From positions 40,299,587 through 40,363,586 of the forward strand of contig NC_068984.1 in assembly GCF_001194135.2 (NCBI RefSeq): DNA of 64,000 bases, written 5' to 3'. The notes beneath the pieces were generated by a model, which had not been told where the DNA came from, ran no database searches, and saw only the letters and a program-made list of their open reading frames with translations. Source of the DNA: Octopus bimaculoides (taxonomy: Eukaryota). Position numbers and translations under genes: made by a program. Every line of letters starts with the position of its first letter. The first letter of the stretch is position 1. This document shows positions 4,401-57,810 of this stretch, in pieces.

Positions 4401-4960
4401 TTTCCTTCAAGACAAATGCAAACACCTTCATATAAGAAGAGAGATCAGTGAGGAAAAAGATATTAAATGTGCCAAACTGTAATTCAGAAAGTGAATGAAG
4501 GAATAGATTTAGGAATTATAATAGAAAAAAATTGAAAGGCAATGAACATATAGTAGAAAAAGAAGACAAATATGATGGTAGATGTAATACTTAAACACAA
4601 ACATTTATACTACTTTCTAAATGTATGATACAATCCTGTTTGTATTATGCAATTTTAGTTTGGGTTCCTTCTGACTAAAGAACTCATGGATAAAATAACA
4701 TCAATACTAAGAAGAGCTACTAACCAAATAACCTGTCTTGGAAAATCTAATGCAACCAAAGGGGTTAAAAAAAAACTCAAATTCCCAAGCTTGTGAAAGA
4801 AAAGTCTGAGTGAAAATGCTGGAAATATACTAGATGGTAAATGGACTCTATGAAGAAGATTTATGCAATTTTATTTCAGAAGGGAACCCTCAAGTGAATG
4901 TAGAACAAAAGGGCACAGTGATACTATCATATTGGAGAACATTAAACAGAAATAAAGTTA
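1480..4960 (+). mobile_element. Highly degenerate CR1/L2-like LINE ORF2 relic, interrupted by a SINE-like insert at ~2401-2826
   Basis: Decayed RT motifs around 4220-4320: agatcagttctggga (SVLG), ttaatatatgtcaag (LIYV) and tttgatgatgctgaagtt (FADDAK-like). An 'ilRRATnqi'-like segment occurs near 4700. Many stops and indels. Confidence 0.6.
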
Positions 4961-6062
4961 AGAGATATTTGGCTTAATAGGAAAAATGTTGAATAATTTG
5001 ACAGAACTGGTAGCAGCTGAAAACATTAATCATCAACATCATTTTAGTGACCACTTTGCCAAGCTTGTAAGGGTTAGATGTAGTTTGCTTTGGCAAATTT
5101 TCAGTGGCTCGATGCCCTTCCTATCACCAACCCTCGCTTGTTTTCAAGAAATGTAATATTTCTCCAAGGCCAGACAAGTTCACATTGAAAGATTGGCAAT
5201 GAAGAACACCACTTATATGATGGTGACACTAGTTTATAAGATAAGGAGGAACTCCTGTGCATACGCACCTCATACTTCTATCCATCTGCAAAATCAACTC
5301 TGGAGGCTTTGGTTGGTTTTGGGCTTTAGTAGAAGACACTTGTCCAAGGTGCCATGCCATGGAACTGAGCCCAAAACCAGGTGGTTGAGAAGTGAACTTA
5401 ACCATACGGCCACACCTGTATCCATGCCTATTCCATGCCTGCATCTAGAATATTTTAAAAATTGGTTGGATAAACAGTGGAAACAATTAAGCGTAGAATG
5501 TGGTAATACTTTGAAAGTGGACATAATCTGGTGCACCACCCACCAAAGGAATCGGGAGTTCAGTATAAAACTTCACTAATGAACTTGGAATGGAAAACTG
5601 CTACAGCCATTACCACTAACATTGGCACCATTATTGTCCTTGTTATTATTGTTATCATTGTTGTCATCATCATTATTGTTATCATTATCATCATGCCACA
5701 AGTTGTGGTCACTCATCATCTTCACAAAATTCAGTGTCTTGAAATTAGCTTCCACAACTTCTTCCTCTGTCTTCTTCAGTGCTCTTCTCTAAAGGTTCAC
5801 TTCCATTTGAACCACCTGACACTTTTCTACCAAAATACCTCTATCAATATGTATTATATGTTCATACCAACAATCTCCTCTCTTGCAAACTAAATCTGAT
5901 TTGTCTTATACCCAATATGTTGGCTGTGTACTTACATTATGTATGCATCCAGCAGAGTATATTCAACTCTATAACTCTATCCTTTCTAGCCTTTGCCTTC
6001 AATACTTAATGTTAAGCAATATGCTTTGTACATAAGTATGATATAACCAATTAGAAAGAATG

Positions 6063-6103
<41 letters not shown>

Positions 6104-6386
6104 NNNNNNNNNNNNNNNNNNNNNNNNNNNNNNNNNNNNNNNNNNNNNNNNNNNNNNNNNNNNNNNNNNNNNNNNNNNNNNNNNNNNNNNNNNNNNNNNN
6201 NNNNNNNNNNNNNNNNNNNNNNNNNNNNNNNNNNNNNNNNNNNNNNNNNNNNNNNNNNNNNNNNNNNNNNNNNNNNNNNNNNNNNNNNNNNNNNNNNNNN
6301 NNNNNNNNNNNNNNNNNNNNNNNNNNNNNNNNNNNNNNNNNNNNNNNNNNNNNNNNNNNNNNNNNNNNNNNNNNNNNNNNNNNNNN

Positions 6387-6451
<65 letters not shown>

Positions 6452-6599
6452 TTTGTTGCTACCTGAGGTAATAACTCTCTCCTGTTTTTACTCTGGCTGC
6501 TATACTGTCAGAGAACCTATGTCTGCTGTTAATTAGGTCACTTAGTTAATGGAAACTATCAAAGTGAATCTTCTAAACATTTCGAACAAATATATTTCA

Positions 6600-9100
6600 T
6601 TGGTTGTACTTACTGCTAACTACTCTTGTGCATCTGCCACATATGAAGTCTTCCCTCTCTCAGCCTACCAATGATCCCACTATGCTCTTGTACATCTAGA
6701 ATTCATATTGGATACATAGCATTCCTGCTTGCTCATTTTATTTGTATTGAACATGGCCAGTCCCCAGATAGCAAGTACAATGCTGTCTTTTTTCCTACTA
6801 TCTAAAACTTATTGTTTTTGTTAGATTTAGCTGGAAACCGCTTAGTTTTCAACTTTGCTTCAACATTAAAAAATTTGATTTTTTAATTCTACAGATTCAG
6901 CTCTGAGAACTAGATAATTGACATATAAAATCTCTGAAGAATAAATGTTCTTAAACTTTTTTATTTTGGCCTGGTGAACAATGTTCATGTTTTTCATGCT
7001 GTTGATACTGCTAGATTGAATGGTGCTGCCCAGGTCAAATCTATAATGATATCTTTTAGGCAGCCAAAAATGAATGTGTACATTTGATATGTTTTTTTAC
7101 TGTGAACCTTTCGTATCTTGTGTTCTTGTGGTTCTAAGTTGTCCTTCATTGAAATTCCAGTTCTTGTAAGGTTAAACTTATTTACAGTTTCTTGTTTTCT
7201 TGGTTTATGGTGTTTTTTGTCTATATTTTACCATTGCATTAATTGTCCTTCTTTTAGATTCTAATTTTGGTAAGAGTAATACTTGTCCAGGAATTTCTAG
7301 TTCATGGAGATTTTATTGTATATAATAAACAAGTGGAAGCTAAGAAACAAGCCTCAATGGATGTCTACTTGCACATAAAATTCTTCATTGGACTCAACGT
7401 TAACTCTCATCTTGTTGATGGCATCTCTGTATGTGGTTTGCATAGCGCTCACAGCCATTCACTTACATTTAGTTCTCTTAACTACCAAACAACAGAATGT
7501 GGTACTTTATCAAAGGTCTTTTCCAGGTTGACAAATGCTAGGTATAGTTGCTTGCTCTAAGCTGAGCACTTCTTTTGCAGTTGTCTTACTAGCAAAAGAC
7601 ATCAATGGTAATCTGACCTGGTATAACCAAAACCGAATTTCATCAAAACTAATTTTATCACTGACCAGTTGTTCTAAAACTCATTCTGCTACTTTTCCAT
7701 CAATTTGGTACCTGTTGTTGGCAATTTGCCTTTATAGCACTTGATGAATGCTCCACCTGTTAGTGTTTATGAATCTGGTTGATATACAACTGAATAGTAT
7801 GAACTCTTTTTAACAGGATGTGTTCAGTGTCTCAACAATCACTTCTGATTATTCAATTATTTCCTCTGTTTTAATATCCTTAGTTACATTTTCAACTATA
7901 TAATTGTCAACATAATTAGATGGTCTTTCTTTTAGTTCTACTTGTAGTTCCTCTTTGTCCTTTGCATTCTCTACATTCAGAAAATCTTTTAGTAGTATTT
8001 CCAAGCCTCTTTTTGGCATCAGTCAGGATAAATGTGCCACACTAATTCTGCACACATTTCCCCCTCAACAGTATCTTCTCTGGTCCTCTCATTACAATGA
8101 ATTGGCAAACCCTTATTTTTCCAGCTTATTTCTTTGCCATGTATATCTAGCTTCTCTTCTGGTTATCTGTTACTGTTTGCTGTTTCGCCCCTGTTCTACT
8201 AACCTGACCAGACTTGTCACTTAGCTTTAATAGCTCTATCCACTGTACAATTTTGCCACTATGGGATTTTGTGGCATGCTCCAACAATAAACCTGGTCTG
8301 TGACTCTGAGTAAGATGTCTCATAGAAACTCCTTGTTATAGAGAGGAAATATGTCACTGTCTCCTCCATGACATACACTTCAACTAGAACTGTCTGAAGC
8401 TACTTTCAGTAAAAGTCTTTCAGCCTCCATACTTTCTGTCTTCAGATTGTTTTGTTTTTCTGGATCCATTTAGCTCTTAATCTGTTGTTACTAATCACTA
8501 GTTTATGTTGCATGGTACATTCTTCACTATGAAAGACTCTGTTCAATTTTACAATAAGCATTATATCTATCTGGCTTGTGTGTTCACCTGGTTAGTTGGT
8601 AATTAAGTGGCTGGCTGCTTTCTTGCAGTTTGACACATAAATGGTTTCATTATTTGTATCACAGAACTCAAAGAAATTTAATCTTTCCTTATTACTTATA
8701 CCATACCTATTACTTCCATATATGCCAATCATAGTGTTGTCAAACATATTCGTTAAAATTATCAGTTATGATAAAATCACTGTCATTTGTTATTGTGATA
8801 GTCTGCAAGAGAACCTCATAGAAATGTTCCTTTTGTTATCTATCAATCTTGGTTGTGATATACATTCAAAGATCACTATTGCTATTGTGTTGCCTACGAC
8901 TAGTCTAAACTTAATTATACCATCCATACTCTTGCTACTTTACTTACTTTACTTACTTTATCCAACCCCGAAGTATATGTATCTGTGTTGCATGGTCATG
9001 AGGAGTCTTACTGAAGTATCCCCAAATATTACCTCTTGTATTCAGTTCACATTTATTTGTCTCTGCTCCAAAATTTGTTCAAGATCTATCCATCATTGAT
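6600..9100 (-). mobile_element. Degenerate RTE-clade LINE (endonuclease remnant, RT, C-terminal Cys-rich region)
   Basis: Minus strand at ~7550-7400 reads QLYLAFVNLEKTFDKVPHSVVW (RT motif LYLAFVDLEKAFDRVP). ~6720-6620 gives a decayed 'SGIIGRL..EDFICGRCT' motif. Frameshifted and stop-ridden. Confidence 0.7.
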
Positions 9101-9759
9101 GTTGGTAGCCCTGAAGTTTTCTACATGTAAAGAAGAAAGGTTTTTTTTTGTAGTGCTCATTACCTGTATTTTTGGCATCTAAGGGAGTCTTCACATATGG
9201 CTGGTTGTTTCTGCCTATCTATCTCACTGCTGTGCAAGTAGTTAAGTGTTAGTCCAGTATATGAAGTTGGAATTTTTCATTGTATTTGTGACTGTCGTGA
9301 TTTTGGCATGGTTTCTTGACTTGGTGTATTTCATCATACATCCTGCACAAGAGAAGTTGTCTGTCAGGACTAAAGTATCTCTTCTAGATTGAGTAAATTT
9401 TTTATTCAAAGGTATTGTTCTCGTAAAACAGTTTAGAGAGCATTAACTCTTAGTCAACCCTCCTTGTAGGATCTACATCTCTATACAAATATTTATTTAG
9501 TGTTGTTGCTATCCTAATTGGGCAGGCATTATTATGAATCTTGTTTCTCCAAAATACAACTAAGAGTGCATAAAGTGTTTTTGTTAGGAAGGAAAGGATG
9601 ATGAGTTTGTTTGGAGTGTATGAATTGTTAGGAGCAGAGTGGAAGCTGACATAGCTAGGTGGGTTGGATATCAGGACAACTAACCCCTGACAATTGCCCT
9701 CTGGACAATAGCTCTCTAGAAAACGATTATTTCTATTTCATACAAATATCACAGAATCT

Positions 9760-10110
9760 TAAAGAAAATATTCAGTAAGGCTATCTAGAGCTGTCTTAGA
9801 AATGTATATCCACAAATCTCTAACTGCAACTAAAAGTCTATGAGCACCAGACAGACAGACAATAAACCTACCTTAAATGTAGAAATATGGTTAAAATAGA
9901 AAAATACCTGTCAGCAAAAATTGTACACAGAGCACTTGTAGAATCAGAGAGCATGATAAAGATGTATATTGGGTTAAATGGGAATAATTTTAAAATTAGA
10001 TGCATACAACCCACTCATTCATTCAGCCTTAGGAGTAAGAGCAGGGTAACAGCACTTTCAAAATACATTGGACTTTTAAAGGACAAGAAAGAGCAGTACT
10101 ATAATAATGT
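9760..10110 (+). mobile_element. Penelope-like GIY-YIG endonuclease fragment
   Basis: ORF 9887-10153 contains IVHRALVESE..KMYIGLNGNNFKIR...HSFSLRSK...TALSKYIGLLKDK, the IVY...YIG...FK.R...H..SF...T.LSKYIW pattern. Confidence 0.65.
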
Positions 10111-11049
10111 GGACTATTGTTGCAAAGGCAAAGATGTACAATGGCTGTTGTAGTTACTATCATAATTTCCAGAAAACTCCTGTTTTGTCATGCATGTATG
10201 CACATGTATGTGTGCACATGTGCATGCATGGGCATGTATGTACATATGTAAGTATAAGCTTGACTAAATTGAAGCCTTCTTACATTGGCAATTATATGGA
10301 CATTTGCTATAGCTGTTGTATGTTTTTGCCTTGAAGGTAAAGGTGTGAGTGTGCATGCTTGTGTGTATACACTCTGGGTTGGGTTGTTAATGATAGTTGT
10401 GAACAGCTCAGCCTGAGGTGAGGTTGTCAACTTTTGATACAATAAACATACACCCCCCCCCCCCCACTTTTAGCTAAGACTGAGCAGCTAGAAACAAATG
10501 TGATTGATTGTTTTGTTTCTTCAATTCTACACATTGTTCAGTTACTTTCTGTATTTTACTTCATTATATTTTTTATTAGTTTCTGCTAAGAAGAATTTTG
10601 TTTGTGTAGCAATAAAAAAAAAAAAAAAAAAGCAAAAAAGCTTTTGGCTTCAGGAGTTTTGTTTTGCACACTTTTTAGCTTGTGCTGAGTTTTTTCTTCT
10701 CTCTTTGCCCTCTTCCACATTGTTCAGACTTGTCAGATACTGGCCATATAGCAAATTTTCTTCCTCACCTCTTAATATGACATTTTGTAAGCTTATTTTC
10801 AGTTAATTTTTTTATTCATTTTTTTTTCTTTAATAATTTATGTTATTTCTCCATTTTCCTATCATCTGTCTGTCACTTTAGCTTGTGTTTTATTGTTTTG
10901 TTGGCTCCTTGAAGATGGAAAAATTTTTATTTGTTGTCTGTGTTTTGAAGCTATTTGTATTAGTTTCTCTTTATTTTTTTCACTAGATATTTTCCACTAG
11001 ATATATTACCAAATATTTTTGTAGTTCTACAGTTGATATTTAATAATTT

Positions 11050-11725
11050 TTTAGTTGCAGAAAACCTTGCCTCTCTTTATTTATGATAAATATAAGTTTT
11101 CTGAGTTGGATTTTAGACAGTGTTTTCTAAAGGTAGTAATTATTTTTCTTGCCCAGTTGTGAATATTGCAATTATAGTTTATTGCTAGAAAAGCTAGATT
11201 ATTGATACTTATTGCCTTATTTTTTTTCACCTTATTTAATTCTTTTATTTCATTTAGTTCTGTTACTTTATTTAGCTCTGTTATTTGATTCAATTCTCTT
11301 TTAGATATTAATCTAATGTGCTTTATAATGTTCATGCTTTACCTTTTCTCTCATTGATGCATGTGATTTGTAAGTTTATTAATTCCTAAGAATTTTTGCA
11401 TGCTTGCTCTAATTTTCATGTCCCTGCTTCATTATCTAACACAGTAGCAGTGACTTTTGATAATTTTCCTCTCTTCAGAATTGCAAAAGTGCATTTTTCT
11501 AATCCAAATTGCAAATACAATTCTCTTTTGAGTCCATTTACTGTCTGCAACATTGTTTCCAGTTGTTTATCATCTACAGTAGACAACTTGAGGTCATCCA
11601 TATGCAAAATAACATTCATAGCTGAGATTAGAGTGACTTAGCATGTCGGTGAAGGTGTAAATGCTAGGCAAGAAATGAGTGGAACAGAGTCTCCTTGGAA
11701 CAATCCTCTTTCAATAGGGAAGAGC

Positions 11726-11790
<65 letters not shown>

Positions 11791-12500
11791 ATTCTCTCTT
11801 TTTCAAGCTGTTGAAGAATTATTTGCTGTTTATTCATTACCTGTTTACTGCAGCTTCTTATTGTTGGTGCTGCCTTACTTATGGATAATGTTTCTAAGAC
11901 TCCACAGCCAAGGAATTCTATCAAATGCTTTCTAGTTCTCAATCCAAGACATGCTCAGTTTCTTCAGTTTTAGTTGTTGATCAGTAATTGATCTTTTCAA
12001 CCTTGTGAGCTTTTGCAACATCCTTTCTCTTCTTCTGAAAGGAAGTTTTTTTTTTACAGATATTTATCCACTATGATATTATTGATAGTGAGGCTTTATA
12101 TACTACAGGTATACTTGTTCTTTTGAACATTGACATCTTTGGTGATGTTTTGCTGTACATACTCATCCACTCCCAAGTTATTTTTACTTCTCTTGCTGGT
12201 GGTACTACATTGATTTCTATTTTATTTTTACCTAGTTCTTTGGAAATGATTTTGGATTGGAGTTCAACTGTTTGTTTTGTTTGGAAGGTTATTGTAACAA
12301 TGGATTATTTTTGCAATTTAGCAAGAAACTATAGTTTTAGATGTTTTTGATTTTGGTGCTTCTTTTTTGTTGGCTATGTTTCTGTATTATTTGTCTTTCT
12401 GCTTTCTTTTTTATTCGTTTCTGTCATTCTATTGAGAGATCTTTCTTTCATTTTCCATCTTCCTTCTTATGTTTGTTTTTCATGATGTTTACTTATTAAA
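11050..12500 (-). mobile_element. Degenerate R4/NeSL-like (RLE-type) non-LTR retrotransposon RT region, interrupted by (ATT)n at ~11727-11790
   Basis: Minus strand gives KAFDRIPW (~11920), RGLFQGDS (~11710), HMDDLKL...QFGLEKC..AILKRGK (ORF 11416-11619) and KHIRLISKRELN...KNKAISIN...NW (ORF 11081-11335). Confidence 0.75.
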
Positions 12501-13444
12501 ATTATTATGTTTTCAACCATTTCATGCAAGTTTCTATTGCACCACACTGTGTTTGTGTTGTTTTGTCTTTTATAGCAGTATGTATGTATGCTACATCTGA
12601 TTGTTACTCTGTTGTATGGTTTGACATGTTGATTCTTGTGTTATTTTTGTGCTTAGTCTGTTGGATATAATACATTCTTGTAAGTTTTTGTTGCTTATTT
12701 AAAAATGTTTCTGGTAATGTTTCATATGTGTGTGAGTTGTGTTGCGTGTTATAAGACTAGGTGATAATTGTGCAGCATATGTGCTGTGTGGGTGGCACTT
12801 GTGTAGAATGTGAATTGTATGAGTTGTCGGTGTGTGTGGGAGGTTTTATAAAATCATGTGCTGATTATGTAAGCATATGCATTGTATTATGTAGAATATA
12901 TGCTGTGTGGGTTGTATGCGTTATTCAATGGTGATTCCGTTGACAGTGTGTAATGTTATTTTATTATGTGATGATTGAAGAGAGTATGTGTTGTATGCAT
13001 TGTACTGTGAGTGTACAGTTTGTGTTACTATTGAGTTTAGAGTGTTTTGAGTAGGATGTGGGCTTCCTCTAGCAGGGTTATATTTCTTAGACTGTATTTA
13101 GTTGCTAATCCTGGTATAATTTTTTATGTTTTGTTATTTGTGCTATTTTCTTCATAACTAGTGCTCCAGTTATTTGTTTTACCTATCATATCTTATATCC
13201 TTCATACTTTCATTTCAAGATCCCATACTTTGACAGTTTCTTGACCCCCTTATGATGATAGAATCAGTAGAGTGGCATGTTGAATGTATTGCAGTATTTA
13301 GTTAGGTCTCTATCCATTCTTAGTTTTAATTTGCATTTTCTCATTTCAGGTTCATAAAATAAGTACTAGTGGAGTATCTAAAAATACACAAAAATATTAT
13401 GGGCTTGTGCTTGCTTATGTTAAAAATTATTATTAGTTTTAAAA

Positions 13445-13582
13445 TAAAATATGGTCTGTTGTCTTCTGCTGAACCGGGGTCACCCCTTGACCCTAGGGTC
13501 ACAGTAGGTCCTCATCTCATGGAGAGTACATGGCGTAAAATGTGTGCAGAACCTAGCAACATTATTTTCTGAAGTTCCCCCA

Positions 13583-13585
<3 letters not shown>
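13445..13585 (-). mobile_element. 5'-truncated 3' end of an RLE-type non-LTR retrotransposon
   Basis: Minus strand reads LQKIMLLGSAHILRHVLSMR*, the typical RLE C-terminal LQK..LLGTA.ILR.VL motif, followed by a short 3' UTR. Confidence 0.65.
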
Positions 13586-13624
<39 letters not shown>

Positions 13625-13630
13625 TATTAC

Positions 13631-14185
13631 TGAGTAAGAGAACAGCTTATGTCATCAAAGTGATACTGGGGTACAAATATACAAAACCCAATATACCCAT
13701 CATGACTACCCTTTTGATAAGGGTACACCAAGTACATGCATCACAACCATATGTGTACATTGTGGTGACCTCATATCATTATAAAATGCACATGACCTTG
13801 CAGGTGGGGCCTAGTTAGAATTTTATTCAGGTCGAGTTGTTCATTCTGCTCAAAATGTCATTGAATATAAGTTGTTTAAGGATGATGAATGAAACACCCC
13901 TGTTTCAAGAAGTGAATTATTCAAACCTTAAAGAATTCTTCTCAACACATGGCTATGATATTTCCCTTACTACTACTGCTCATGATTAGAGATGCACATA
14001 TTGTCGGCCACTAAGGGACATGCTCAACTGATTAAGGTCAAACGACTGACAAGCAAATCTGTGTTTTTTTTTGCAAACTTTTTGCTGTAGCACATATTTT
14101 ACACCAAGGCAAAACATGTACTTGTTAACACTTTCAATCAGCTAAGATCAGAAGTCATGAGAGCCACAGACTTGTACTGCATCAA
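13631..14185. repeat. Dispersed ~550-bp interspersed repeat between (ATT)n and (CTA)n tracts
   Basis: Resembles a common octopus repeat as I recall it (gagagcag...catgactacccgtctgataagggtacacc...gcaaatctgtg). Family not assigned. Confidence 0.5.
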
Positions 14186-14186
14186 G

Positions 14187-14238
<52 letters not shown>

Positions 14239-14292
14239 TTCTTCTTCTTCTAATACAATCAATGTGACAGAGTGTGTGACAAAAGTGAATCT

Positions 14293-14502
14293 TTAACGTT
14301 TTAACATTTAAACTGACCATATCTGGCTGAAATATTCTGTTTTATGTTGAAACTGACCATTTATCCTACAATTTCATTCTAAAAATAAACAATCACATTA
14401 TTTGAAATCTCAAAGCTATAAGAAAATGCATGATTAATTCAAAACAATGTGAGTAAATGAGCATTACATGTTACAGAGTAATCTGAATGCTAGAAGGTTG
14501 AA
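14293..14502. mobile_element. piggyBac-like MITE (decayed)
   Basis: Left end ttaacgttttaacatttaaactg and right end tctgaatgctagaaggttgaa approximate the TTAA|CCCTTTAGCATT...AATGCTAAAGGG|TTAA inverted termini. Confidence 0.5.
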
Positions 14503-15185
14503 TTATAGATACAATCCATCCAATGAATTTCTGTACCATTTCCATCTACCTATTTTTTAAGTTTCTTTGAGAGGGCTTGGGTCAACCCAATGCTATTGTA
14601 AAAGGCACTTGCACAAGATGCCATGCGGTGAGATTAGACATGAGACCTCATGCTGCATACACATATGCATGAATACATGTGCATACAAGTTTGTGCATGC
14701 CTGTGTGTATGCACATAAGCACACTGATGTTGAATATGCACTTACACTTGTATGTGTGTGGTTATGTGCATATAGGTGTGTGTGTGTGTGTGTGTTTTGT
14801 ACTAGAAGTATGATAATATGCATCCTGTATTCACGTCGTAAAATAGCTGGTGACAGAAAGGTGTCCATCTGTAAAAACCATGTAAAAGGACATCATCATC
14901 ATCATCGTCGTTGTTGTTTAATGTCCGCTTTTCATGCTGGCATGGTTTGACATGAGGTAGCTAGGCAGAAGACTGCATAGACTTCTGTGTCTGTTTTGAC
15001 GTGGTTTATTATGGCTGGTTGCCCTTCCTAACACCAACCACCCTGCAGTGTGGACTGAGTACTTTTTACACGACACCAACATAGGCGAGGTCAGTTTTAG
15101 CATAGTTTTTACTGCTGGATGCCCTTCCAAATACCATTCACTTTGCAGTGTGGACTGGATGCTTTTTACGTGGCACCAGCACTGA

Positions 15186-15530
15186 CTGTATGGTAAGAAG
15201 TTTACTTCCTAACCACATAATTCCAGGTCCAGCCCCACTGTGTGGCACCTTGGGCAAGTGTTTTCTATTATAATCCTGGGCCAACCAATGCCTTGTAAGT
15301 GAATTTGGTAGAGAGAAACTGTGTAAAAGCCCATCATGTATGTGTATCTGTTTGTGTTTGGCTTCCATCATTGCTTGACAACCAATGTTGGTTTAGCAAC
15401 ATATAGAATTAGTGTTCGGGTAGAATTAGTGATAGAATTAGTGTTCGGGTTGATTTGTTTGACTAAACTCTTTAAGGTGGTGCTCCAGCATGGTTGCAGT
15501 TCAGTAGCTGAAACAAGTAAAAGATATAAT
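15186..15530 (+). mobile_element. tRNA-derived SINE, family B (CpG-decayed copy)
   Basis: Head tgtatggtaagaagtttacttcctaaccacataattccaggtcc, body gcaccttgggcaagtg, tail ggtgctccagcatgg...gctgaaacaagtaaaagata. Same family as 19285, 43086, 49097 and 51563. Confidence 0.8.
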
Positions 15531-15847
15531 AGCTCCTCCTATATATANNNNNNNNNNNNNNNNNNNNNNNNNNNNNNNNNNNNNNNNNNNNNNNNNNNNN
15601 NNNNNNNNNNNNNNNNNNNNNNNNNNNNNNNNNNNNNNNNNNNNNNNNNNNNNNNTATATATATGTATGTATGTATATGTATATATAAAGGAGACCACTA
15701 GGTGGACTGTTAATGTGCTAGAAGAAGATCACATGTAATGTGTCTACTAAGACTGAATTGTTCTTAAAGCAAATTCAGTAAAGTAGTAAAACGTATGCGA
15801 GCAGGACAAGTGAAAATTACATAAATATATACAAAATTATCTGCAAA

Positions 15848-15919
15848 CTAGTTTCAAAATTAACATTTTCTTACCGAAAATATCTGTTTTCGGTAAGAAA
15901 ATGTTAATTTCGAAACTAG
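15848..15919. repeat. 33-bp-arm near-perfect palindrome (one mismatch, 6-nt loop)
   Basis: ctagtttcaaaattaacattttcttaccgaaaa-tatctg-ttttcggtaagaaaatgttaatttcgaaactag. Confidence 0.9.
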
Positions 15920-15929
15920 GGCCTTGTTG

Positions 15930-15979
<50 letters not shown>

Positions 15980-17273
15980 GAGTGTCACCATCATGCCAGT
16001 GATGTCCTTCATTTCCAATCTTCTGTGAAAACATGTCTGATTTTTGGGGAAATATTGCCTTATTTGGAAATCGTTGACGGTGTCTGGCCATAGAAAATCT
16101 GCTTTAGCAAATTCCATCTGACCTATGTGAGAATGGAAAAGTGAACATTAAAATGATGATGATGGTGATGTTTTCTTGCATTGGTTTGGCCAATCACAAA
16201 CAGTGGTACATCATCCATTTTAGCTATTTAAATACAAGTTGAACTGTTTTGTCTCTCTTCTATCACCAAGATTTTACTTTGCATCTATGAATAAGCTATA
16301 TAATATCTGTCTGTCTGTCTGTCTGTCTATCTGTCTGTCTCTATCTCTCTGTCTCTCTCTCTGTCTCTCTCTCTGTCTCTCTGTCTCTCTCTCTACTCAG
16401 CTCCCCCTTGGTTGTGCTTCAATAGAATAGAATTGGCTAGCTTAAATCTTATAACATGTTAAGTTGGATGAAAAGTCATTTGCTGATTGTTATTTCTGCT
16501 AGTTCAGAAACACATTATCTGCTTTTCCTGTTTACTACTGGCCAGTATCTATTTCTATACATTGACCTTATAAATAAGAAAAAAATGTTTATAAACACTT
16601 TCTACAATACAATTGACCTTGTGAAAGAAGAAAATATTTACAAACATTCTCCCAATACATAATGCACAGACAAATTTCTATTAAAATCATGTAATCAAAT
16701 AGTTATTTTTCATTTTCGTGTTTTTGTAACCTGTACTTGCAACCCATGTAAGGTCTATATGCTATTGAATTATTATACCAACAATACCGGAAGAGGTCTG
16801 TTTTCTGTTGATATGCAGGAAATGAATGAAAAGTGATATATAATTCTTCTTTTTTCTATGAATATTCTTTTTATCATATAAAGAAATTGTGTATGCTACA
16901 TAATATACATGTATATTTATGTGCATCTGTTTATCTCGATCTATCTATCTATCTATCTATGTATGTATCTATCTATCTATCTATCTATCTATATATATAT
17001 ATATATATATATATATTTTTTATGTGTATATATGTATGTGCATCTTTATATGTGTATATGTATGTGTGTGTATATATGTACACACACCCACACATAAATA
17101 ATTTTGTTAAAGGTATGCTCTATATCTGACTGAAATTAATGTTAAGTCATGGGGGCACACTTTACATTTTATGTGGTATGTTAGAGATGTTAATCAGTTT
17201 TAATTCAGTGTCAAAAGATATTTTAAATTGAAGCATCTACTTTATATTGCTGTCTCTCTTACTTTCTTTCCAG

Positions 17274-17390
17274 TTGTGCTCCCACGCCTGGCTGCAATGG
17301 CTCTTGCTAATAACAGTATAACTAACGAAATCAAAAAGACTGATGTTGCTCTGCAGCTCTTTGAGGCCTACAGCGCCATGTCTTGTTGCT
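17274..17390 (+). CDS. RELCH: RELCH (RAB11-binding, LisH/coiled-coil/HEAT-repeat protein, KIAA1468) internal coding exon, third-from-last
   Basis: Acceptor ...ctttctttccAG at 17272-17273. Reads (x)VLPRLAAMALANNSITNEIKKTDVALQLFEAYSAMSCC, matching my recollection of human RELCH (FVIPHLHKLALVNN...DIATHLFEAYSALSCC). 117 nt, phase 1-1, followed by donor GTATCCTTT. Confidence 0.9.
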
Positions 17391-18207
17391 GTATCCTTTA
17401 TTTATTGATGATTTCTTAATATAATAACTATTACCTATTGTTTTATGAAAAAATACTGTTGTTGTTTTTTTGTTTCTTATTGTTGTTGCTTTTATGATAT
17501 TAAGCTGGTAGTTTCACAAAAACTGCAATGCATCAGACTAAATTACTTATACTAAAAATTAATATTTATCCCTACTTAAAAGTGCATGTAAGCACTCTTG
17601 TTTATCACTAGCAATGTACACAAGAGTGCTTATATGCACCAAAAAACCATATGAGAAGTTCTCTCATGGTAACTATCACAGTATTCTGTAACTTTTGGTA
17701 TTAATACGGCTTCTATCACTAATAATCATTATTTATACTATTTAGTGTTGCTCCTCTGTATTCTGAGTTCAAATCCTGCTGTGGTTGGCCTTATCTTTTT
17801 ATCTGTCTGAAATCAAGAAAATAAATACTAAATGTATTAAAATTAATTTAATCAATTAAACCATGTTTTTACAAATTTCTGGACTTTTATCAGTGTAAGA
17901 CATTATTATTATATGCAGTTAGAGATCACTGTGTGGTCTCTGAATGCATTGTAAATTAGACTGGCATTATAGGGTTTTCAAGTAGTATACCTCTCTTATT
18001 TTCATAGTCTCTAGATGTGTTCCTTAGTGGTAAAATCGAAAAAATATAGAAACAAATAAAATAATCTGTGACATGAGGTGTTTGTTGGCTTTTATGCTTA
18101 GATGTTAAAAGAAAATGTTCAATATGTGTGAGATATAGATGGATTGAGGATTGTTGATAATGTCCATGAATTTTATAATGTCTATTAAATCCTTAATTAC
18201 AAACTAG
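17391..18207 (+). other. RELCH: U12-type (minor spliceosome) GT-AG intron of RELCH, 817 bp
   Basis: 5' splice site GTATCCTTT (17391-17399) equals the U12 consensus RTATCCTTT. U12-type branch site TCCTTAAT at 18190-18197 lies 10 nt before TAG (18205-18207). No polypyrimidine tract. Splicing restores the SCC|F reading frame. Confidence 0.88.
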
Positions 18208-18361
18208 TCATCAATGATCAGTTGGTGCAGGAAGCCATGCTACCTGGATTACGGTACCTTCGCCAAGACTTATCACAGCTTGCTCCTGAGAGAGAGGAGG
18301 TGATGAGTTCTATGATCAAAGAATATGAAGCAAAGCTAGATGCATCAAAATCTTTAGAAAG
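18208..18361 (+). CDS. RELCH: RELCH penultimate coding exon
   Basis: T|TC completes Phe, then INDQLVQEAMLPGLRYLRQDLSQLAPEREEVMSSMIKEYEAKLDASKSLE. Compare recalled human FISEDLMVNHFLPGLRCLRTDMEHLSPEHEVILSSMIKECEQK. Ends AG|gtaagt, a canonical donor at 18362. Confidence 0.92.
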
Positions 18362-20612
18362 GTAAGTGTTATCTCATAGTCTATGTTGTCACAATTTCAA
18401 TGTTTTCATGTGTTGTATTTCTTGAAAATATAGTCTTCTATAAGAGCTGGCCAACAATTGACTTTATCAAATGTAATGGAGTAAAGTGTTAATAATCAGT
18501 TTGTAGTTGTACAATGGTAGATTTTGATATCTAATCATATGTAATATTGTTATTATAAATAATAAAGTCAAAGCGAGTATAAGGTGTGTGTGTGTGTGTG
18601 AGAGAGTGACCACAATAGCTCGATAACAAAGCAATTATAAGAACATTTCTTGATTTGATACAAATATTTTCTTGCAGCTGCAGCCAGCTAATTTCTTAGT
18701 ATTTTGGAGATCTTTCTATGAATGCTAGGAAAGTGAAGTATTACAATAGAGCTGGGTTAGTGTAATATGGTCAAAAGTATTGTTTGAATGAACGTTTGTG
18801 ATCTTAGTTTTGGAAGGAAGCCATGTGTAAGTAAAGAGTATTTACTTGAATAAGTTCTGTAGGAGATAAAATATAGATTTAATGGTAAGTGAAACAATAT
18901 GTGCTGCGTGATCTCTGTGGCTAAAATGAAGCCAGAATGTTTTACAGATCAGTAACCATTATGGTATATGTTGGAAATATGAACAAGAAGACATGACTTG
19001 TTAGGAACCAGAGCTTATCAGTTAGAGACAGTTTGCTTGCAAAGAGAATAGTGTTATTTTGGATATAGTGGAGAAAATCAATGACTGAAAGAGATGTGCC
19101 ATTTTGGTAGGAGGAATAGTTTTCTATTGTTAACACTTGGCCTCTATACAGCAGAATTTACTTACTTTCTCTCATTAGATACTCCTTATACATGTTTTTT
19201 TTTTCCATTTTTTTAATGTACTCATTAGTGTTTTTATTATGGATTAACAAGTTTTTCAAAGATTTTATATATTTTATTTTTTGATTCTTTTATTTGTTTC
19301 AGTCATTTGATTGTGGCCATGCTGGAGCACTGCCTTGAATGTTTTTTTTTTTAGTTGAACAAATCAACCCCAGAACTTATTTTATTTTATTTTTTTTAAA
19401 CCTAGTACTTATTCTATCTGACTCTTTGGCCAAACCGCTAAGTTATGGGGATGTAAACACACCAACACTGGTTTTCAAGTGGTGATGGGGGGATAAACAG
19501 ACACCAAGACACATACATACATACATACATACATACATTTATATATACACATACGACAGGCTTCTTTCAGTTTCTGTGTACCAAATACACTCACGTGGCT
19601 TTGGTCAGCCCAAGGCTATAGTAGAAGACACTTGTCCAAGGTTTCATGCGGTAGAACTGAACTCAGAACCATGGGGGTTGGGAAGCAAGCTTCTTGCCAA
19701 ACAACCATGCCTGTTCCTATATTTCATGTTATTTATTCTTGATTAATAACTGGAATAATTGTACTTCAATTATGTCACTGTTGAGAAAGATTTGAATGGT
19801 ACAACTCTCATGTATCCTTCCATTGAAGTCAATTGAACACATATCCCATTGAATACATAAAATGAAGAAATTGATTATCTATCACATTAAGTTAAAGACT
19901 GATGATTGTGAGATGTTTTACATATGCTAAAAAAAACAAACTTTCATCTAATTGCGTTCTAGTTTGATTTTTCTCTTGATCCTTATCTAACTTTTACACT
20001 CATTACTAGAGGTTACCTTTCTTAATCATACTCATACTATTAATCCTTAATAGAAACAACAAAATTATGATTGAACTTTCTGTTGTTTTCTGTATGTGAC
20101 AACATATTTACTAGTTTGATTACTGATGCTCATAGCTTTTTCCTTTCTTTTGTTTGACATTCTTATGTGTTAGGAGGTGCTATTTATCAGTTTATATTTT
20201 ATTAGAACCTTTTTCAATCTTCAATCATTCAGTTACTTTGTCATTTTGTTTTAGACTTTTGGAAAATTAATTTTGTTTTATCAGTTATCCACCCAAAAAT
20301 GTATGATTGTGTTATAAATATATTATTGTGGTTGCTATGTATAAAAAAACTTGCATCTACTAAAACATTCTGCTGGCTTTAAATGTTCAAAGCATTCTTT
20401 TGAATATCTAAAGTTTTTTTTTTTGAACTAATTTATTTATTTTGATTTTCTATTGCTAAAATACAACAACAAAAAAACTGTACTTTGCAAAGAAGCTATT
20501 ACTTTCACACAAAGATACTCTGACTTAATTTAATTTTGAGTTTGGCTGAAAGACATTTCAAATGTAAGAAAATATGTAATTTTTTCTTTTTTCTCTTTTC
20601 TTTTTGTTTTAG
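18362..20612 (+). other. RELCH: Last RELCH intron, conventional U2 GT-AG
   Basis: gtaagt donor, ttttctttttgttttAG acceptor, phase 2 consistent across the junction. Contains a SINE at ~19285-19718. Confidence 0.88.
19285..19718 (-). mobile_element. tRNA-derived SINE, family B, near full length, in the last RELCH intron
   Basis: Colinear with 43086-43414 (tttcagtcatttga...ccatgctggagcac...gaagacacttgtccaagg...ccatgcctg). CpGs mostly mutated. Confidence 0.85.
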
Positions 20613-20742
20613 GAGTCCTAGTCAATCAGTATCTCCGACCCCTGGTGGAAATGCTGAGGATGTCAGAGCAAGAGTAATGAGCAAAATCAAAGATACAACT
20701 TCAAAGGCTCACATTCCTAATATCTTCATGCGTAAGAAGTAG
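20613..20742 (+). CDS. RELCH: RELCH terminal coding exon (to stop codon)
   Basis: Long polypyrimidine tract plus AG at 20611-20612. AG|G gives Arg in phase with the previous exon, then SPSQSVSPTPGGNAEDVRARVMSKIKDTTSKAHIPNIFMRKK-TAG. The ending resembles recalled human ...ANVFQRKK*. Confidence 0.9.
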
Positions 20743-20888
20743 CCTCTAACTATGTTATCATTCCCAGAATTGCCTCTTTATCTTCTTCTTTACAAATAGA
20801 TAAAGTTGTTAGCACAAATTAAAAAAGAAAATCATGAAATATTAATTAAAAACTTTTCTTTTGTCTGTGAAATAATGGCTAACATTAT

Positions 20889-21305: not shown

Positions 21306-24300
21306 TAGTGGAAAAAAGGGATCATTGAGTAAATAGTTGTTTGAAAGCCTTGTTTTATTTCACTTTTGCTGATTAGAGAGTAACTGTTTAAGAACTTTGG
21401 AAATTAACTCTATATATTAAATTCTTGACTACAACACTTAGATTACTTGAAATTTTTACAAGATTTTGATAAAATTTATTCAGAGTGTTGTATTTTTCTC
21501 CTAAATTGAATGTTCAACAATGTGACACTAATTTACTTTTGTGATCGCATCAACCAGCTTGGTTTAGTCAATACATAAACCATTTTTTTTTCTTGTTCAG
21601 GTTAAAGAAAGCTTTTTTTTTTATAAAAAAAAATACAAAGTCAAATTGCTATTCAAAGTTTACTGTTTTCTTAGGCTTCAGATATAAATGCACACAAAGT
21701 GTATACATATTGGTAGCTATGCCAGGTATCTTAATTCAGACATTTTGTCTTTGTAATAGTTTGAGGGTTTCATTTTTATATTTATTCTGTTTTCTTTTAA
21801 TCACATCTGTATTAGGAAACTGAAATTAAATTACTTTTTGTAGATCCTTATTTAGACTTTGAATATTACCATTAAGTGTCTTTAGAATACATTTCTGCAA
21901 AAAATGAAAAAAATCAAAGAAAGAAAAACAAATTAGATTTTTCTACACTTTTTATGATTTAAAATTTTCTAATTTACCATAATTTTCCAATATTGTCTTC
22001 CCTATGTTTTTTAAAATTAGTATTTGTAGCAATGGAAGTTTTGCACAAACTACCTTTTTTAATACTTCTGAAAATGGTTGTATCTTTTAATTGTACTTTG
22101 TACTCTTTTGTCTGTTTCCATTTATCATTCTACATCGATGGGTTCTATATAATATAGCTAAATTGTGGTTTAATTCTTCTGCTAACCCTTGCTTTACAGT
22201 CCTAAATTCTTATATACTCTTCTTTGGTATCTATTATTTTTTTGTATGATTCTCTATTGATATTTTGGGGGAAATATTTTACTTCTAACTTGGATAAAAC
22301 CAATTTAATCAAGTTTAATTATAAGTTGATACTTTAAACAAATTTCTAAACCATTTTATTAGATTAATGCTATTAACTGGTTTCAGTATTTAAACGTTAC
22401 AAGGGCAGGATTTGGTAGAAATAGTAAAGCCTTTCAGTGTATAGTTTTGTTCCTCTGTTTTCTGGTTTCAAATCCTGCTGGGGTTTACATTGCCTTTCAT
22501 CTCTCCAGGGTTCATTAAAATAAGTACCGGTCACATACTGTGAATACATTGGTTGGTCTATTAATTATATCTTCCCTTTTCACAAATTGGCAATGTGCCT
22601 AGATAAAAAGAAATTACTATTTCAAAGTTAAAAAGCAAAATAATAATAATAATAAACATTTATTCGTTTTTCTTTCTTCAGTTCTTTATAATAACTAAAT
22701 TTTCTTAGCCACTCTTTTTTTTTAATGACAGGGACTGGTAATGTGAACATTCATGATGTAAAATCTACCCTCCCCCTTTTCACTTCTATATGATCATTCC
22801 CTACAATATTGACAGCTGACATTCATAGATGAAATTTTCTCTTTTTTCTTCTTCTATCAATACAGATATTCATTCCTTACTGCAATCAATGTTGACATAA
22901 TACATTGAAACACTTCTCTTAAAACTGAAATGGTTAGTGCATTTTAATAGGAATATTCTGTATGCCATTATTGATTTGTTGTACTGACTGTGGACATTTT
23001 TACTCTCCTTTATTTTTTCCCCTTCATTTCTCCTTTTCTTTCTCCTCAACTCATTAGTTAGGATTTTAAGCCTTAATTTACACAGAGATCAGAACAGTTT
23101 GTGAAAGTGAGCAATCATTAACCATTTACAGCTGATTTTAATGATGCATACTGCAACCTTCAAAATCTCTGCAAGACTATTAATATAGAATCAAAAAAGA
23201 ATTACAATATTGGACTTTTTTTTCCTTTTTGTTTATTAGATGGTTACTGCATCCTCTGCTGAGGTGATATTTTATGGGTTTCACAACCAAGCTGAGCCCA
23301 TTTCTTTCCAGGTGATTTATTGTAAACTATTTAGACCAAAGCAATTTTGTATGACATATTAGGTTTCCCATTTAATCTCATGAACTCAGAATAGATAATA
23401 AATAAGTGCCTGCATGTTAATGCCTTGCTTAATTATCCTCTCAAACTTCCGGATATTATATTTCTATTTATAAGAGACATAGCTCTGTAGATGAGGAATA
23501 ATACAAAACAATGGTTGTCATTTCCTTCATATAGCTATTTTTGATTTGAATGAAATTGTTTGAAGAAAGTGGATATAAATATACACTCTAGAATGGGAGT
23601 TTAAATCATTGTGTATACACACACACACATGCACGTGTCCACACACACATACAAACACACATTCATACACATATAAACATACAAATGCATGCATGAACAT
23701 GCTATATACAATCACATGCACATGTCTGTCTTTATATAAATGATATGAATTAAACATTCTAAGACTTGTGACAAAAAAAAAAATACAAATTTAAATTTTA
23801 AAAAATTATTATTTACTTGAGTATGTACGATTGTATGTTTTGTATGTATGTTGGCCTGCAAAATCTCAGAAATAATATTTGGTTATTTAGTTTTAAGTAT
23901 TTATTCCTTTTAAAAAGTATCAATATCCATTAGTAATTTTCAAAAAAACAAAAAACAAAAAAAAACAAGCTGCTTTTAGATATAGAAATGACTTTTTTTT
24001 TTTATAGATGTTTCAATAAGAAAATGTACTAATTTTATACAACAAAATTGCTGGCTTCTTTTAAAATTATTATTCTGGAATAAAAACATTGAAAATTACT
24101 TTAAAAAAATTATTTCTTTGATTTTTACTCATCTCATTTTCCAAACAAAACAAAACAAAACAAAACTTGGTCCATAGAGTTTTTCTTTCCAATCTATTTT
24201 TCCATTTTCTTCTGTCTATGAAATGTAAACATAATTAAATTGCATTTAAACTTAAATTATTCAATGTCTGAATTTAATTCAAAAATACTAGAAAAGATTA

Positions 24301-56344: not shown

Positions 56345-57810
<1,466 letters not shown>

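What the first reader, a model, noticed from the sequence alone, without database searches (positions are those of the whole stretch)
17391..18207. Minor-spliceosome (U12) intron in the cephalopod RELCH gene
Seen: donor GTATCCTTT, branch site TCCTTAAT 10 nt before the terminal TAG, no polypyrimidine tract, and splicing that joins SCC|F in frame. Established: these are diagnostic U11/U12 recognition signals, and U12 introns are rare, position-conserved and can be rate-limiting. Inference: RELCH is a minor-intron gene in this mollusc, which implies a functional minor spliceosome, and the intron may be ancestral to bilaterians. It has also tolerated a decayed SINE (~17750-17900). A U2-trained gene predictor would read through to the stop at 17419, as the ORF track does, and could mis-annotate the C-terminus.
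Basis: partly seen in the sequence, partly recalled or inferred. Interest (0 to 1): 0.7.

Follow-up and report, generated by a model that had tools for sequence, protein, structure and literature searches.

The report
Conserved U12 intron in octopus RELCH
The octopus RELCH gene carries a textbook minor-spliceosome (U12-type) intron at the same codon where other molluscs, a brachiopod, an annelid and a fish have one; human and mouse RELCH are already catalogued as minor-intron genes, so it is real but ordinary.

Summary
The intron 17391-18207 (+) starts with GTATCCTTT, has TCCTTAAT with its branch A 11 nt before the terminal TAG, lacks a polypyrimidine tract, and joins ...SCC|FINDQL... in phase 1. 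The exon ends are fixed independently by protein homology and by a spliced decapodiform cephalopod transcript.

The donor is the best U12-type 5'ss among all 6,935 GT sites in the window. As a U2 donor it scores no better than a random GT. Both flanking introns are classical U2 type.

The gene is the 3' end of RELCH/KIAA1468 of Octopus bimaculoides. The same phase-1 intron is U12-type in cuttlefish, a bivalve, two gastropods, Lingula, an annelid and a teleost. Saccoglossus and a tick show matching 3' ends only.

MIDB already lists human RELCH and mouse Relch as minor-intron genes (5'ss GTT|GTATCCTTG). Published surveys report that molluscs are rich in minor introns, most of them orthologous to human ones.

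The "SINE" is a real dispersed repeat, not proven tRNA-derived. Interest is low.

The parts
17250..17273 (+). 3' end of the upstream U2-type intron (polypyrimidine tract plus CAG acceptor)
   Evidence: The sequence ...ctgtctctcttactttctttccag|TTGTGC has a pyrimidine fraction of 0.94, and its best U12 BPS score is only 3.4 bits. The cDNA and tblastn blocks start at 17274.
17274..17390 (+). RELCH coding exon A (VVLPRLAAMALANNSITNEIKKTDVALQLFEAYSAMSCC plus the first base of Phe)
   Evidence: tblastn and blastn to P0001, P0014 and L004; homologues named RELCH/KIAA1468.
17391..18207 (+). U12-type (minor-spliceosome) GT-AG intron, 817 nt, phase 1
   Evidence: orthologous U12-type introns.
17391..17399 (+). 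U12-type 5' splice site GTATCCTTT (the U11/U6atac recognition sequence)
   Evidence: It scores 18.1 bits on a PWM built from 58 human MIDB GT-type minor 5'ss. That equals the training maximum and ranks 1st of 6,935 GT sites in the window. Its U2 score of -1.3 is at the 46th percentile of random GTs. The 12-mer GCTGTATCCTTT is identical to the INSIG2 minor 5'ss, which MIDB scores at 96.9/98.7. Octopus-cuttlefish conservation extends exactly 11 nt into the intron.
17417..17419 (+). In-frame TAA reached if the intron is retained (adds CILYLLMIS, loses the last 94 aa)
   Evidence: ORF 17228..17419; sequence.
17582..17639 (.). Intronic palindrome forming a perfect 20-bp hairpin (a passenger, not part of the splicing signals)
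   Evidence: dG -32.4 kcal/mol, z = -7.85. It is not conserved in the cuttlefish intron, and the Rfam hits are non-significant.
17743..17835 (+). Fragment of a dispersed SINE-like repeat with the B-box-like motif GAGTTCAAATCC
   Evidence: Copies at 22442 and 38692. The 21-nt core occurs 6 times in the window against 0 expected. ARAGORN and Rfam find no tRNA.
18190..18197 (+). U12-type branch-point sequence TCCTTAAT (branch A 18196, 11 nt from the 3'ss)
   Evidence: The 12-mer AAATCCTTAATT scores 7.9 bits (window background) or 10.8 bits (uniform background). That is the 12th percentile of the MIDB training set, and only 4.6e-4 of window 12-mers score as high.
18205..18207 (+). 3' splice site TAG with no preceding polypyrimidine tract
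   Evidence: Pyrimidine fraction 0.56 at -20..-3.
18208..18361 (+). RELCH coding exon B (F)INDQLVQEAMLPGLRYLRQDLSQLAPEREEVMSSMIKEYEAKLDASKSLE(R)
18362..20612 (+). Downstream U2-type intron (AAG|GTAAGT ... TTTTGTTTTAG)
   Evidence: U2 5'ss score 11.7, U12 score -9.2, pyrimidine fraction 0.94.
20613..20742 (+). Last RELCH coding exon (…SPSQSVSPTPGGNAEDVRARVMSKIKDTTSKAHIPNIFMRKK) with stop TAG at 20740-20742
   Evidence: 100% tblastn match to P0001; sequence.

Best explanation
Window 17391-18207 (+) is a genuine GT-AG U12-type intron in the 3' part of the Octopus bimaculoides RELCH (KIAA1468) gene. It is the orthologue of the minor intron catalogued in human RELCH and mouse Relch. The inferred mechanism, from established knowledge of minor splicing, runs as follows. 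The U11/U12 di-snRNP binds GTATCCTTT (U11) and TCCTTAAT (U12, bulging the branch A at 18196) cooperatively. No polypyrimidine tract or U2AF is needed. U6atac then replaces U11 at the 5'ss, and the TAG 11 nt downstream of the branch point serves as acceptor. This joins Cys-Cys|Phe in phase 1. The two neighbouring introns are removed by the major spliceosome. The intron was inherited from at least the bilaterian ancestor and has kept its type, position and phase. Its interior is free to vary: length ranges from 817 nt to 33 kb among species, and the octopus copy holds a SINE-like insertion and a hairpin. Shown here: the signals, the exon ends, the orthology, the conservation, and spliced RNA in a related cephalopod. 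Inferred: which spliceosome actually acts.
For: Signals at the exact coordinates. The 5'ss scores 18.1 bits on a PWM built from human MIDB minor introns with RELCH excluded. That ranks 1st of 6,935 GT sites in the window, with a U2 score of -1.3. The flanking intron shows the reverse pattern, U2 11.7 and U12 -9.2. The BPS lies within the MIDB range with its branch A 11 nt from the 3'ss, and the joint chance is about 5e-8. The exon ends are set independently. P0001 (O. bimaculoides, 100% identical) and mollusc, annelid, brachiopod and vertebrate proteins all read SCC-F across the junction. The spliced transcript L004 aligns in blocks that abut at cDNA 282|283, which corresponds to window 17390|18208. 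L004 differs from the cuttlefish protein by one residue. The orthologous intron, same codon and same phase, has [GCT/GTT]|GTATCCTT plus CCTTRAC 10-15 nt from the acceptor in Acanthosepion, Solemya, Patella, Bulinus, Lingula, Ridgeia and Dallia. Saccoglossus and Amblyomma show matching 3' ends only. MIDB lists RELCH/Relch as a minor-intron gene conserved in 'Both' species, with human 5'ss GTT|GTATCCTTG scoring 97.1 and BPS 87.8. The literature reports that molluscs are minor-intron rich, that Octopus sinensis was analysed, and that most orthologues of human minor introns in molluscs are minor. Phase 1 fits the known bias of minor introns away from phase 0.
Against: No O. bimaculoides RNA-seq junction reads were available; the RNA evidence is cross-species. 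The branch site is on the weak side (12th percentile of the MIDB training set, T rather than C at the last consensus position). No minor snRNA gene lies in the window, so the machinery in this genome was not shown here. That the human MIDB intron sits at the same codon was not verified on human DNA. It is inferred from three things: the teleost locus, the -3..-1 'GTT' that fits Cys(TGT)+T, and the intron's place near the 3' end of the gene. [quoted passage not shown]
Confidence: 0.93

Rival explanations
1. The intron is real but is removed by the major (U2-type) spliceosome, or by both spliceosomes, despite its U12-like signals.
For: The termini are GT-AG. Published work notes that some sites with U12 consensus are spliced by both systems (PMC10853781 abstract). 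The octopus BPS is relatively weak (12th percentile).
Against: The U2 5'ss score of -1.3 is no better than a random GT (46th percentile). There is no polypyrimidine tract (0.56), and the exon ends ...GCT rather than ...AG. GTATCCTT and CCTTRAC have been preserved at this site in every phylum with data. That is expected only if U11/U12 recognition is under selection.
Confidence: 0.05
2. The motifs are a chance co-occurrence, and the true exon junction or gene structure is different (for example the protein ends at the 17419 stop, or this is a pseudogene fragment).
For: Each motif alone occurs at chance frequency in the window. A second U12-like donor at 19812 and a TCCTTAAT at 20044 lie in the next intron without forming a usable intron.
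Against: The joint positional probability is about 5e-8. Exon B and the last exon are conserved and in frame. Homologous proteins and a spliced cephalopod transcript are contiguous across exactly this junction. The same arrangement occurs in 9 other species.
Confidence: 0.01

Closest known systems
Minor intron of human RELCH / mouse Relch (MIDB; human ENST00000398130, chr18:62287468-62291542; Olthof et al. 2019, PMC6717393)
   Same: Same gene family and GT-AG U12 subtype. The 5'ss is nearly identical (human GTT|GTATCCTTG, octopus GCT|GTATCCTTT, annelid GTT|GTATCCTTT). The BPS is of the CCTTAAC type, and the intron lies near the 3' end of the gene. The teleost orthologue, examined directly, has the intron at the same Cys-Cys|Phe codon and phase.
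   Different: The octopus intron is short (817 nt against 4,075 nt in human). Its BPS ends in T rather than C and is preceded by A-rich sequence. Vertebrates have an extra U2 intron splitting the downstream exon (Dallia). Codon-level identity with the human intron was not checked on human DNA.
U12-type GT-AG introns in general (U12DB, SpliceRack, MIDB, intronIC/IAOD classes)
   Same: RTATCCTTT donor, TCCTTRAY branch site 10-15 nt from the 3'ss, no polypyrimidine tract, non-zero phase, flanked by U2 introns, deep positional conservation.
   Different: Nothing of substance; this is a high-scoring canonical example.
Minor introns of molluscs in pan-eukaryotic surveys (Larue and Roy 2023, PMC10639083; Olthof et al. 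2024, PMC11347168)
   Same: These surveys report minor-intron enrichment in Mollusca, include Octopus sinensis, and find that most mollusc orthologues of human minor introns are themselves minor. This intron is one such case.
   Different: I could not find this particular octopus intron listed by name. The relevant supplementary tables are not held in the library.

Membership tests
U12-type (minor-spliceosome) intron, GT-AG subtype | 5' splice site matching /RTATCCTTT at +1..+9 | tested here: met
   GTATCCTTT is a perfect match. It scores 18.1 bits, the training maximum, and ranks 1st of 6,935 GT sites. The 12-mer is identical to the MIDB INSIG2 5'ss.
U12-type (minor-spliceosome) intron, GT-AG subtype | 5'ss scores far better as U12 than as U2 (the SpliceRack/MIDB criterion) | tested here: met
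   U12 18.1 against U2 -1.3 bits. The flanking intron scores -9.2 against 11.7. The U2 matrix came from general knowledge and is approximate.
U12-type (minor-spliceosome) intron, GT-AG subtype | Branch-point sequence TTCCTTRAY | tested here: met
   TCCTTAAT scores 7.9-10.8 bits, within the MIDB training range but at its 12th percentile.
U12-type (minor-spliceosome) intron, GT-AG subtype | Branch A about 10-15 nt from the 3'ss (optimum 11-13, as cited in PMC6717393) | tested here: met
   11 nt; the orthologues range from 10 to 15 nt.
U12-type (minor-spliceosome) intron, GT-AG subtype | No polypyrimidine tract upstream of the 3'ss | tested here: met
   Pyrimidine fraction 0.56, against 0.94 in both neighbouring introns.
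U12-type (minor-spliceosome) intron, GT-AG subtype | Type and position conserved in orthologues | tested here: met
   Seven further species have both ends and two have the 3' end only. Human and mouse are listed in MIDB.
U12-type (minor-spliceosome) intron, GT-AG subtype | The junction is used in mRNA | tested here: inconclusive
   It is met in a related decapodiform cephalopod: the spliced transcript L004 has blocks abutting at 17390|18208. The O. bimaculoides protein model P0001 also uses it. No O. bimaculoides reads could be examined.
U12-type (minor-spliceosome) intron, GT-AG subtype | Removal depends on the U11, U12, U4atac and U6atac snRNPs | not testable with these tools
   This needs minor-spliceosome inhibition. 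No snRNA lies in the window, and the genome beyond the window is not available.
RELCH / KIAA1468 orthologue | C-terminal region homologous to proteins annotated as RELCH | tested here: met
   Profile hits with E-values of 1e-28 to 1e-58 to proteins named 'RAB11-binding protein RELCH homolog' (Aplysia, Saccoglossus) and 'LisH domain and HEAT repeat-containing protein KIAA1468 homolog' (Lingula, Elysia).
RELCH / KIAA1468 orthologue | N-terminal LisH domain and HEAT repeats | not testable with these tools
   Only the last three coding exons lie in the window. The next upstream exon (…RFRDEF) was not found in 1-17273, which contains N gaps.
tRNA-derived SINE (for the 17743-17835 insert) | Many dispersed copies | tested here: met
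   Six copies of the 21-nt core in 64 kb against 0 expected; alignment of three copies.
tRNA-derived SINE (for the 17743-17835 insert) | tRNA-like head with A and B boxes | tested here: inconclusive
   A B-box-like GAGTTCAAATCC is present, but ARAGORN and Rfam detect no tRNA. No A box was identified.

The most novel reading that the evidence does not exclude
Several features could make this intron a regulated retention switch in cephalopods. It is the shortest copy among those examined, has a weak-end branch site (TCCTTAAT) and reaches an in-frame stop nine codons in. Retention would trim the conserved C-terminal 94 residues of RELCH or send the mRNA to nonsense-mediated decay. That would couple RELCH output (Rab11-dependent cholesterol and endosome traffic) to minor-spliceosome activity. 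Nothing here tests this.
Probability: 0.08. Interest if true: 0.35.

Novelty: already known. Interest (0 to 1): 0.13.

Why it matters
It matters little beyond annotation quality. It is a clean, well-controlled example of a minor intron kept in type, position and phase across protostomes and deuterostomes. It can serve as a positive control for U12-aware gene prediction in cephalopod and other lophotrochozoan genomes. It also flags likely mis-spliced models at the same site in Bulinus and Etheostoma. It does not change what is known about the minor spliceosome in molluscs or about RELCH.

Tried and rejected
(1) Motif enrichment in the window: neither RTATCCTTT nor TCCTTAAY exceeds chance, so enrichment is not the argument; position is.

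(2) Rfam scan of the window for U11, U12, U4atac or U6atac, or any RNA: nothing. This is uninformative for the genome as a whole.

(3) A second U12-like pair inside the next intron (GTATCCTTC at 19812, TCCTTAAT at 20044). It was rejected because the only AG follows 3-4 nt after the branch A and no exon homology flanks it.

(4) ATATCCTTT at 56776 as a possible AT-AC intron: there is no coding context.

(5) tRNA detection in the SINE-like insert: negative.

(6) Conservation of the intronic hairpin or of any intron interior in cuttlefish: none.

(7) Full-text literature searches for RELCH or KIAA1468 with minor-intron terms, and for cephalopod with minor spliceosome: no papers. The supplements of the two large surveys are not held.

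(8) A search for named cnidarian or other non-bilaterian orthologues with a broad profile: none appeared among the hits, so pre-bilaterian origin stayed untested.

(9) The upstream RELCH exons were not found in the window.

Full report
**Observation.** Exon A ends ...GCC ATG TCT TGT TGC T at 17390. The intron begins GTATCCTTT (17391-17399) and contains TCCTTAAT at 18190-18197. It ends TAG at 18205-18207, and exon B starts TC ATC AAT GAT CAG at 18208. Joining 17390 to 18208 gives T|TC = Phe in phase 1 and the peptide ...EAYSAMSCC-FINDQLVQEAMLPGL.... Reading through instead gives CILYLLMIS and a TAA at 17417-17419, which is the ORF 17228..17419. The intron is 817 nt long.

**Is it more than chance?** Taken alone, the motifs are not enriched. 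RTATCCTTT occurs twice in the window against 2.29 expected. TCCTTAAY occurs four times against 6.04 expected. The argument is positional. I built weight matrices from 83 human minor introns in MIDB Table S2, leaving RELCH itself out. The octopus donor scores 18.1 bits, equal to the best training site, and is the top U12-type donor among all 6,935 GT dinucleotides on both strands of the window. On an approximate U2 donor matrix taken from general knowledge it scores -1.3 bits, the 46th percentile of random GTs. Its 12-mer GCT|GTATCCTTT is identical to the INSIG2 minor 5'ss, which MIDB scores at 96.9/98.7 out of 100.

The branch-site 12-mer AAATCCTTAATT scores 7.9 bits. That is within the MIDB range but only at its 12th percentile, and 4.6e-4 of window 12-mers do as well. 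Its branch A (18196) is 11 nt from the 3' splice site, and the optimum cited in PMC6717393 is 11-13 nt. The chance of both signals at two pre-specified sites is about 5e-8. Pyrimidine content at -20..-3 is 0.56.

The neighbouring introns give an internal contrast. The upstream acceptor (...ctcttactttctttccag|, 17273) and the downstream intron (AAG|GTAAGT at 18362 ... TTTTGTTTTAG at 20612) each have a pyrimidine fraction of 0.94. The downstream donor scores 11.7 as U2 and -9.2 as U12.

**Are the exon ends independently fixed?** Yes.
- The spliced peptide hits UniRef A0A0L8HDH8 of Octopus bimaculoides (P0001, 125 aa) at 100% identity. That model reads SCCFINDQL across the junction.
- Proteins from Solemya, Patella, Batillaria, Mactra, Lingula, Ridgeia, Lamellibrachia, Dallia and hagfish all read SCC-F(I/M/L) without a gap.
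- A 938-nt Logan contig (L004, SRR9970013) encodes a continuous 179-aa ORF, so it is a spliced transcript. Over the shared region its protein differs from the Acanthosepion pharaonis (cuttlefish) protein by one residue, so it comes from a decapodiform cephalopod.
- Aligned to the window at 77-79% nucleotide identity, its blocks are cDNA 166-282 = 17274-17390, 283-437 = 18208-18362 and 435-569 = 20611-20745. They abut on the cDNA exactly at the proposed junction.

This is RNA-level evidence from a relative, not from O. bimaculoides itself.

**What gene is it?** Profile searches return proteins named 'RAB11-binding protein RELCH homolog' (Aplysia, Saccoglossus) and 'LisH domain and HEAT repeat-containing protein KIAA1468 homolog' (Lingula, Elysia, Plakobranchus). 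The window holds only the last three coding exons: 17274-17390, 18208-18361 and 20613-20739, with the stop at 20740-20742. The preceding exon (…AEPRFRDEF) is not detectable in 1-17273, a stretch that contains assembly gaps. The 100% identity to P0001 and the ten N runs fit a draft O. bimaculoides scaffold.

**Comparative evidence.** I fetched the orthologous loci and read the intron ends at the same Cys-Cys|Phe codon.

| Species (locus) | 5' splice site | Branch site, distance of branch A to 3'ss | Length |
|---|---|---|---|
| Acanthosepion (L008) | gct\|GTATCCTTT | ATCCTTGAC, 14 nt | 3,013 nt |
| Solemya (L001) | gct\|GTATCCTTT | TTCCTTAAC, 14 nt | 33,088 nt |
| Patella (L002) | gct\|GTATCCTTT | ACCTTAAC, 10 nt | 2,459 nt |
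| Bulinus (L003) | gct\|GTATCCTTT | CCCTTGAC | not determined |
| Lingula (L009) | gct\|GTATCCTTT | ACCTTAAC, 13 nt | 8,174 nt |
| Ridgeia, annelid (L006) | gtt\|GTATCCTTT | GTCCTTGAC, 12 nt | 1,459 nt |
| Dallia, teleost (L005) | gct\|GTATCCTTA | CTCCTTGAC, 13 nt | 2,654 nt |
| Saccoglossus (L007) | not in locus | TTTCTTGAC, 11 nt | unknown |
| Amblyomma, tick (L010) | not in locus | GACCTTGAT, 13 nt before CAG\|AC (Tyr, same phase) | unknown |

All donors score 16.3-18.1 bits as U12 and about -2.5 as U2. Octopus-cuttlefish nucleotide conservation runs from exon A exactly 11 nt into the intron (to 17401) and resumes 2 nt before exon B. The interior is unalignable. Two unidentified eukaryotes encode ...SCCF... 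without interruption (L011, L012), so the intron has been lost in some lineages. That is a common fate for minor introns.

**What is already known?** MIDB (Olthof et al. 2019, PMC6717393) lists human RELCH and mouse Relch as minor-intron genes conserved in 'Both' species. The human intron is chr18:62287468-62291542 (4,075 nt), with 5'ss GTT|GTATCCTTG (97.1) and BPS ATTCCCTTAACT (87.8). The mouse intron is chr1:105746186-105750321. The -3..-1 'GTT' is what a Cys (TGT) codon followed by the T of Phe would give, as in the annelid, and the teleost locus shows the intron at that codon. I did not verify the codon on human DNA.

Larue and Roy 2023 (PMC10639083) report relative minor-intron enrichment in Mollusca and include Octopus sinensis in their conservation matrix. 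They also describe the bias of minor introns away from phase 0. Olthof et al. [quoted passage not shown] No paper in the searchable library discusses RELCH with minor splicing, or cephalopods with the minor spliceosome, in its text. The large supplementary tables are not held.

**Mechanism.** The identity of the signals is shown here; their use by the minor spliceosome is inferred from established knowledge. The U11/U12 di-snRNP should recognise GTATCCTTT and TCCTTAAT cooperatively across this intron, without U2AF or a polypyrimidine tract. U6atac then replaces U11 at the donor. The first AG at a suitable distance, the TAG 11 nt past the branch A, is the acceptor. The terminal T of TCCTTAAT, where the consensus has C, would make a G·U rather than a G-C pair with U12 if the octopus U12 resembles the human one. 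That last point rests on my own knowledge and is untested. Failure to splice would replace the conserved C-terminal 94 residues by nine residues and a premature stop.

**The secondary claims.**
- *'Decayed SINE ~17750-17900'.* There is a real dispersed repeat. Segment 17743-17786 matches 22442-22485 at 86%, and 17760-17827 matches 38692-38759 at 72%. Three copies align over about 90 nt. The core TTCTGAGTTCAAATCCTGCTG occurs six times with up to 3 mismatches, against none expected. It contains a B-box-like GAGTTCAAATCC, but ARAGORN and Rfam find no tRNA. 'SINE-like repeat fragment' is therefore fair and 'tRNA-derived' is unproven.
- *'A U2-trained predictor would mis-annotate'.* The octopus model P0001 has the correct junction. 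However, the Bulinus model P0004 uses a TAG only 4 nt past the branch A and inserts YAPPV, whereas the CAG 12 nt further gives SCC|FLSEQ as in other gastropods. The Etheostoma model P0032 lacks SALSCCF, judged at protein level only.
- *'Implies a functional minor spliceosome'.* This is true but already established for molluscs.
- *'May be ancestral to bilaterians'.* This is supported by its presence in Lophotrochozoa and Deuterostomia and probably Chelicerata. Non-bilaterians could not be tested because the profile search returned no named cnidarian or other non-bilaterian orthologue.

**Verdict.** This is the orthologue of a catalogued, deeply conserved minor intron, in a clade already known to keep such introns. 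It is useful as an annotation control but not surprising. Interest 0.13; novelty: already known. The caveat is that I could not find this particular octopus intron listed by name.

Noticed in passing
L003 8800-8870 (Bulinus truncatus, GCA_021962125.1): The annotated protein P0004 reads SCC-YAPPV-LSEQ because the model uses a TAG only 4 nt downstream of the U12 branch A. The CAG 12 nt further on gives SCC|FLSEQLV, as in other gastropods. This is probably a mis-called acceptor at the U12 intron.
   Followed up: partly
P0032 (Etheostoma spectabile protein model): The model reads ...LFEAY-IISEEVMV... and lacks the seven residues SALSCCF that all other vertebrate homologues have at the U12 junction. 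This is probably a gene-prediction error around the minor intron. The locus was not fetched because the look-ups were exhausted.
   Followed up: no
L011 7001-7390 (ENA ERZ27247872 contig) and L012 546-932 (GCA_024449895.1): Two unidentified eukaryotic genomic contigs encode the RELCH C-terminus with ...SCCF... uninterrupted, so the U12 intron has been lost in those lineages. L011 carries RELCH in a few large ORFs, which suggests an intron-poor genome.
   Followed up: partly
L007 2682-2768 and 6525-6611 (Saccoglossus kowalevskii): Exon B and the 45 nt of intron upstream of it are present twice, identically, 3.8 kb apart. This is either an assembly artefact or a very recent tandem duplication.
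   Followed up: no
window 17582-17639: A palindrome in the U12 intron folds into a perfect 20-bp hairpin (dG -32.4 kcal/mol, z = -7.85). It is single-copy in the window, is not conserved in the cuttlefish intron, and has only non-significant Rfam hits.
   Followed up: partly
window 19812-19820 and 20044-20051 (+): The second-best U12-like donor in the window (catGTATCCTTC, 15.4 bits) and a TCCTTAAT both lie inside the downstream U2 intron. The only AG follows immediately after the TCCTTAAT, and no coding homology flanks the pair. Judged a chance pseudo-site.
   Followed up: yes
window 56776-56784 (+): An ATATCCTTT (AT-AC-type U12 donor consensus) with no recognisable exon upstream. This is consistent with the chance expectation of about 2 per window.
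   Followed up: partly
window 52400-53154 (-): Two adjacent ORFs (135 and 115 aa) look like fragments of a non-LTR retrotransposon reverse transcriptase (…YVAFIDLIKAFDLV…). Identified by eye only.
   Followed up: no
window 1-17273, with N runs at 6104-6386 and 15548-15655 among ten in the window: The exon preceding exon A (…GPNAEPRFRDEF) is not found upstream in the window. The public O. bimaculoides model P0001 is a 125-aa fragment that starts at a Met inside exon A. The RELCH gene is therefore fragmented in this draft assembly and annotation for reasons unrelated to the U12 intron.
   Followed up: partly
L005 7612-7755 (Dallia pectoralis): Vertebrates have an extra U2-type intron splitting the exon downstream of the U12 intron (…SPEHE|VILSSM…). 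The invertebrates examined lack it.
   Followed up: no
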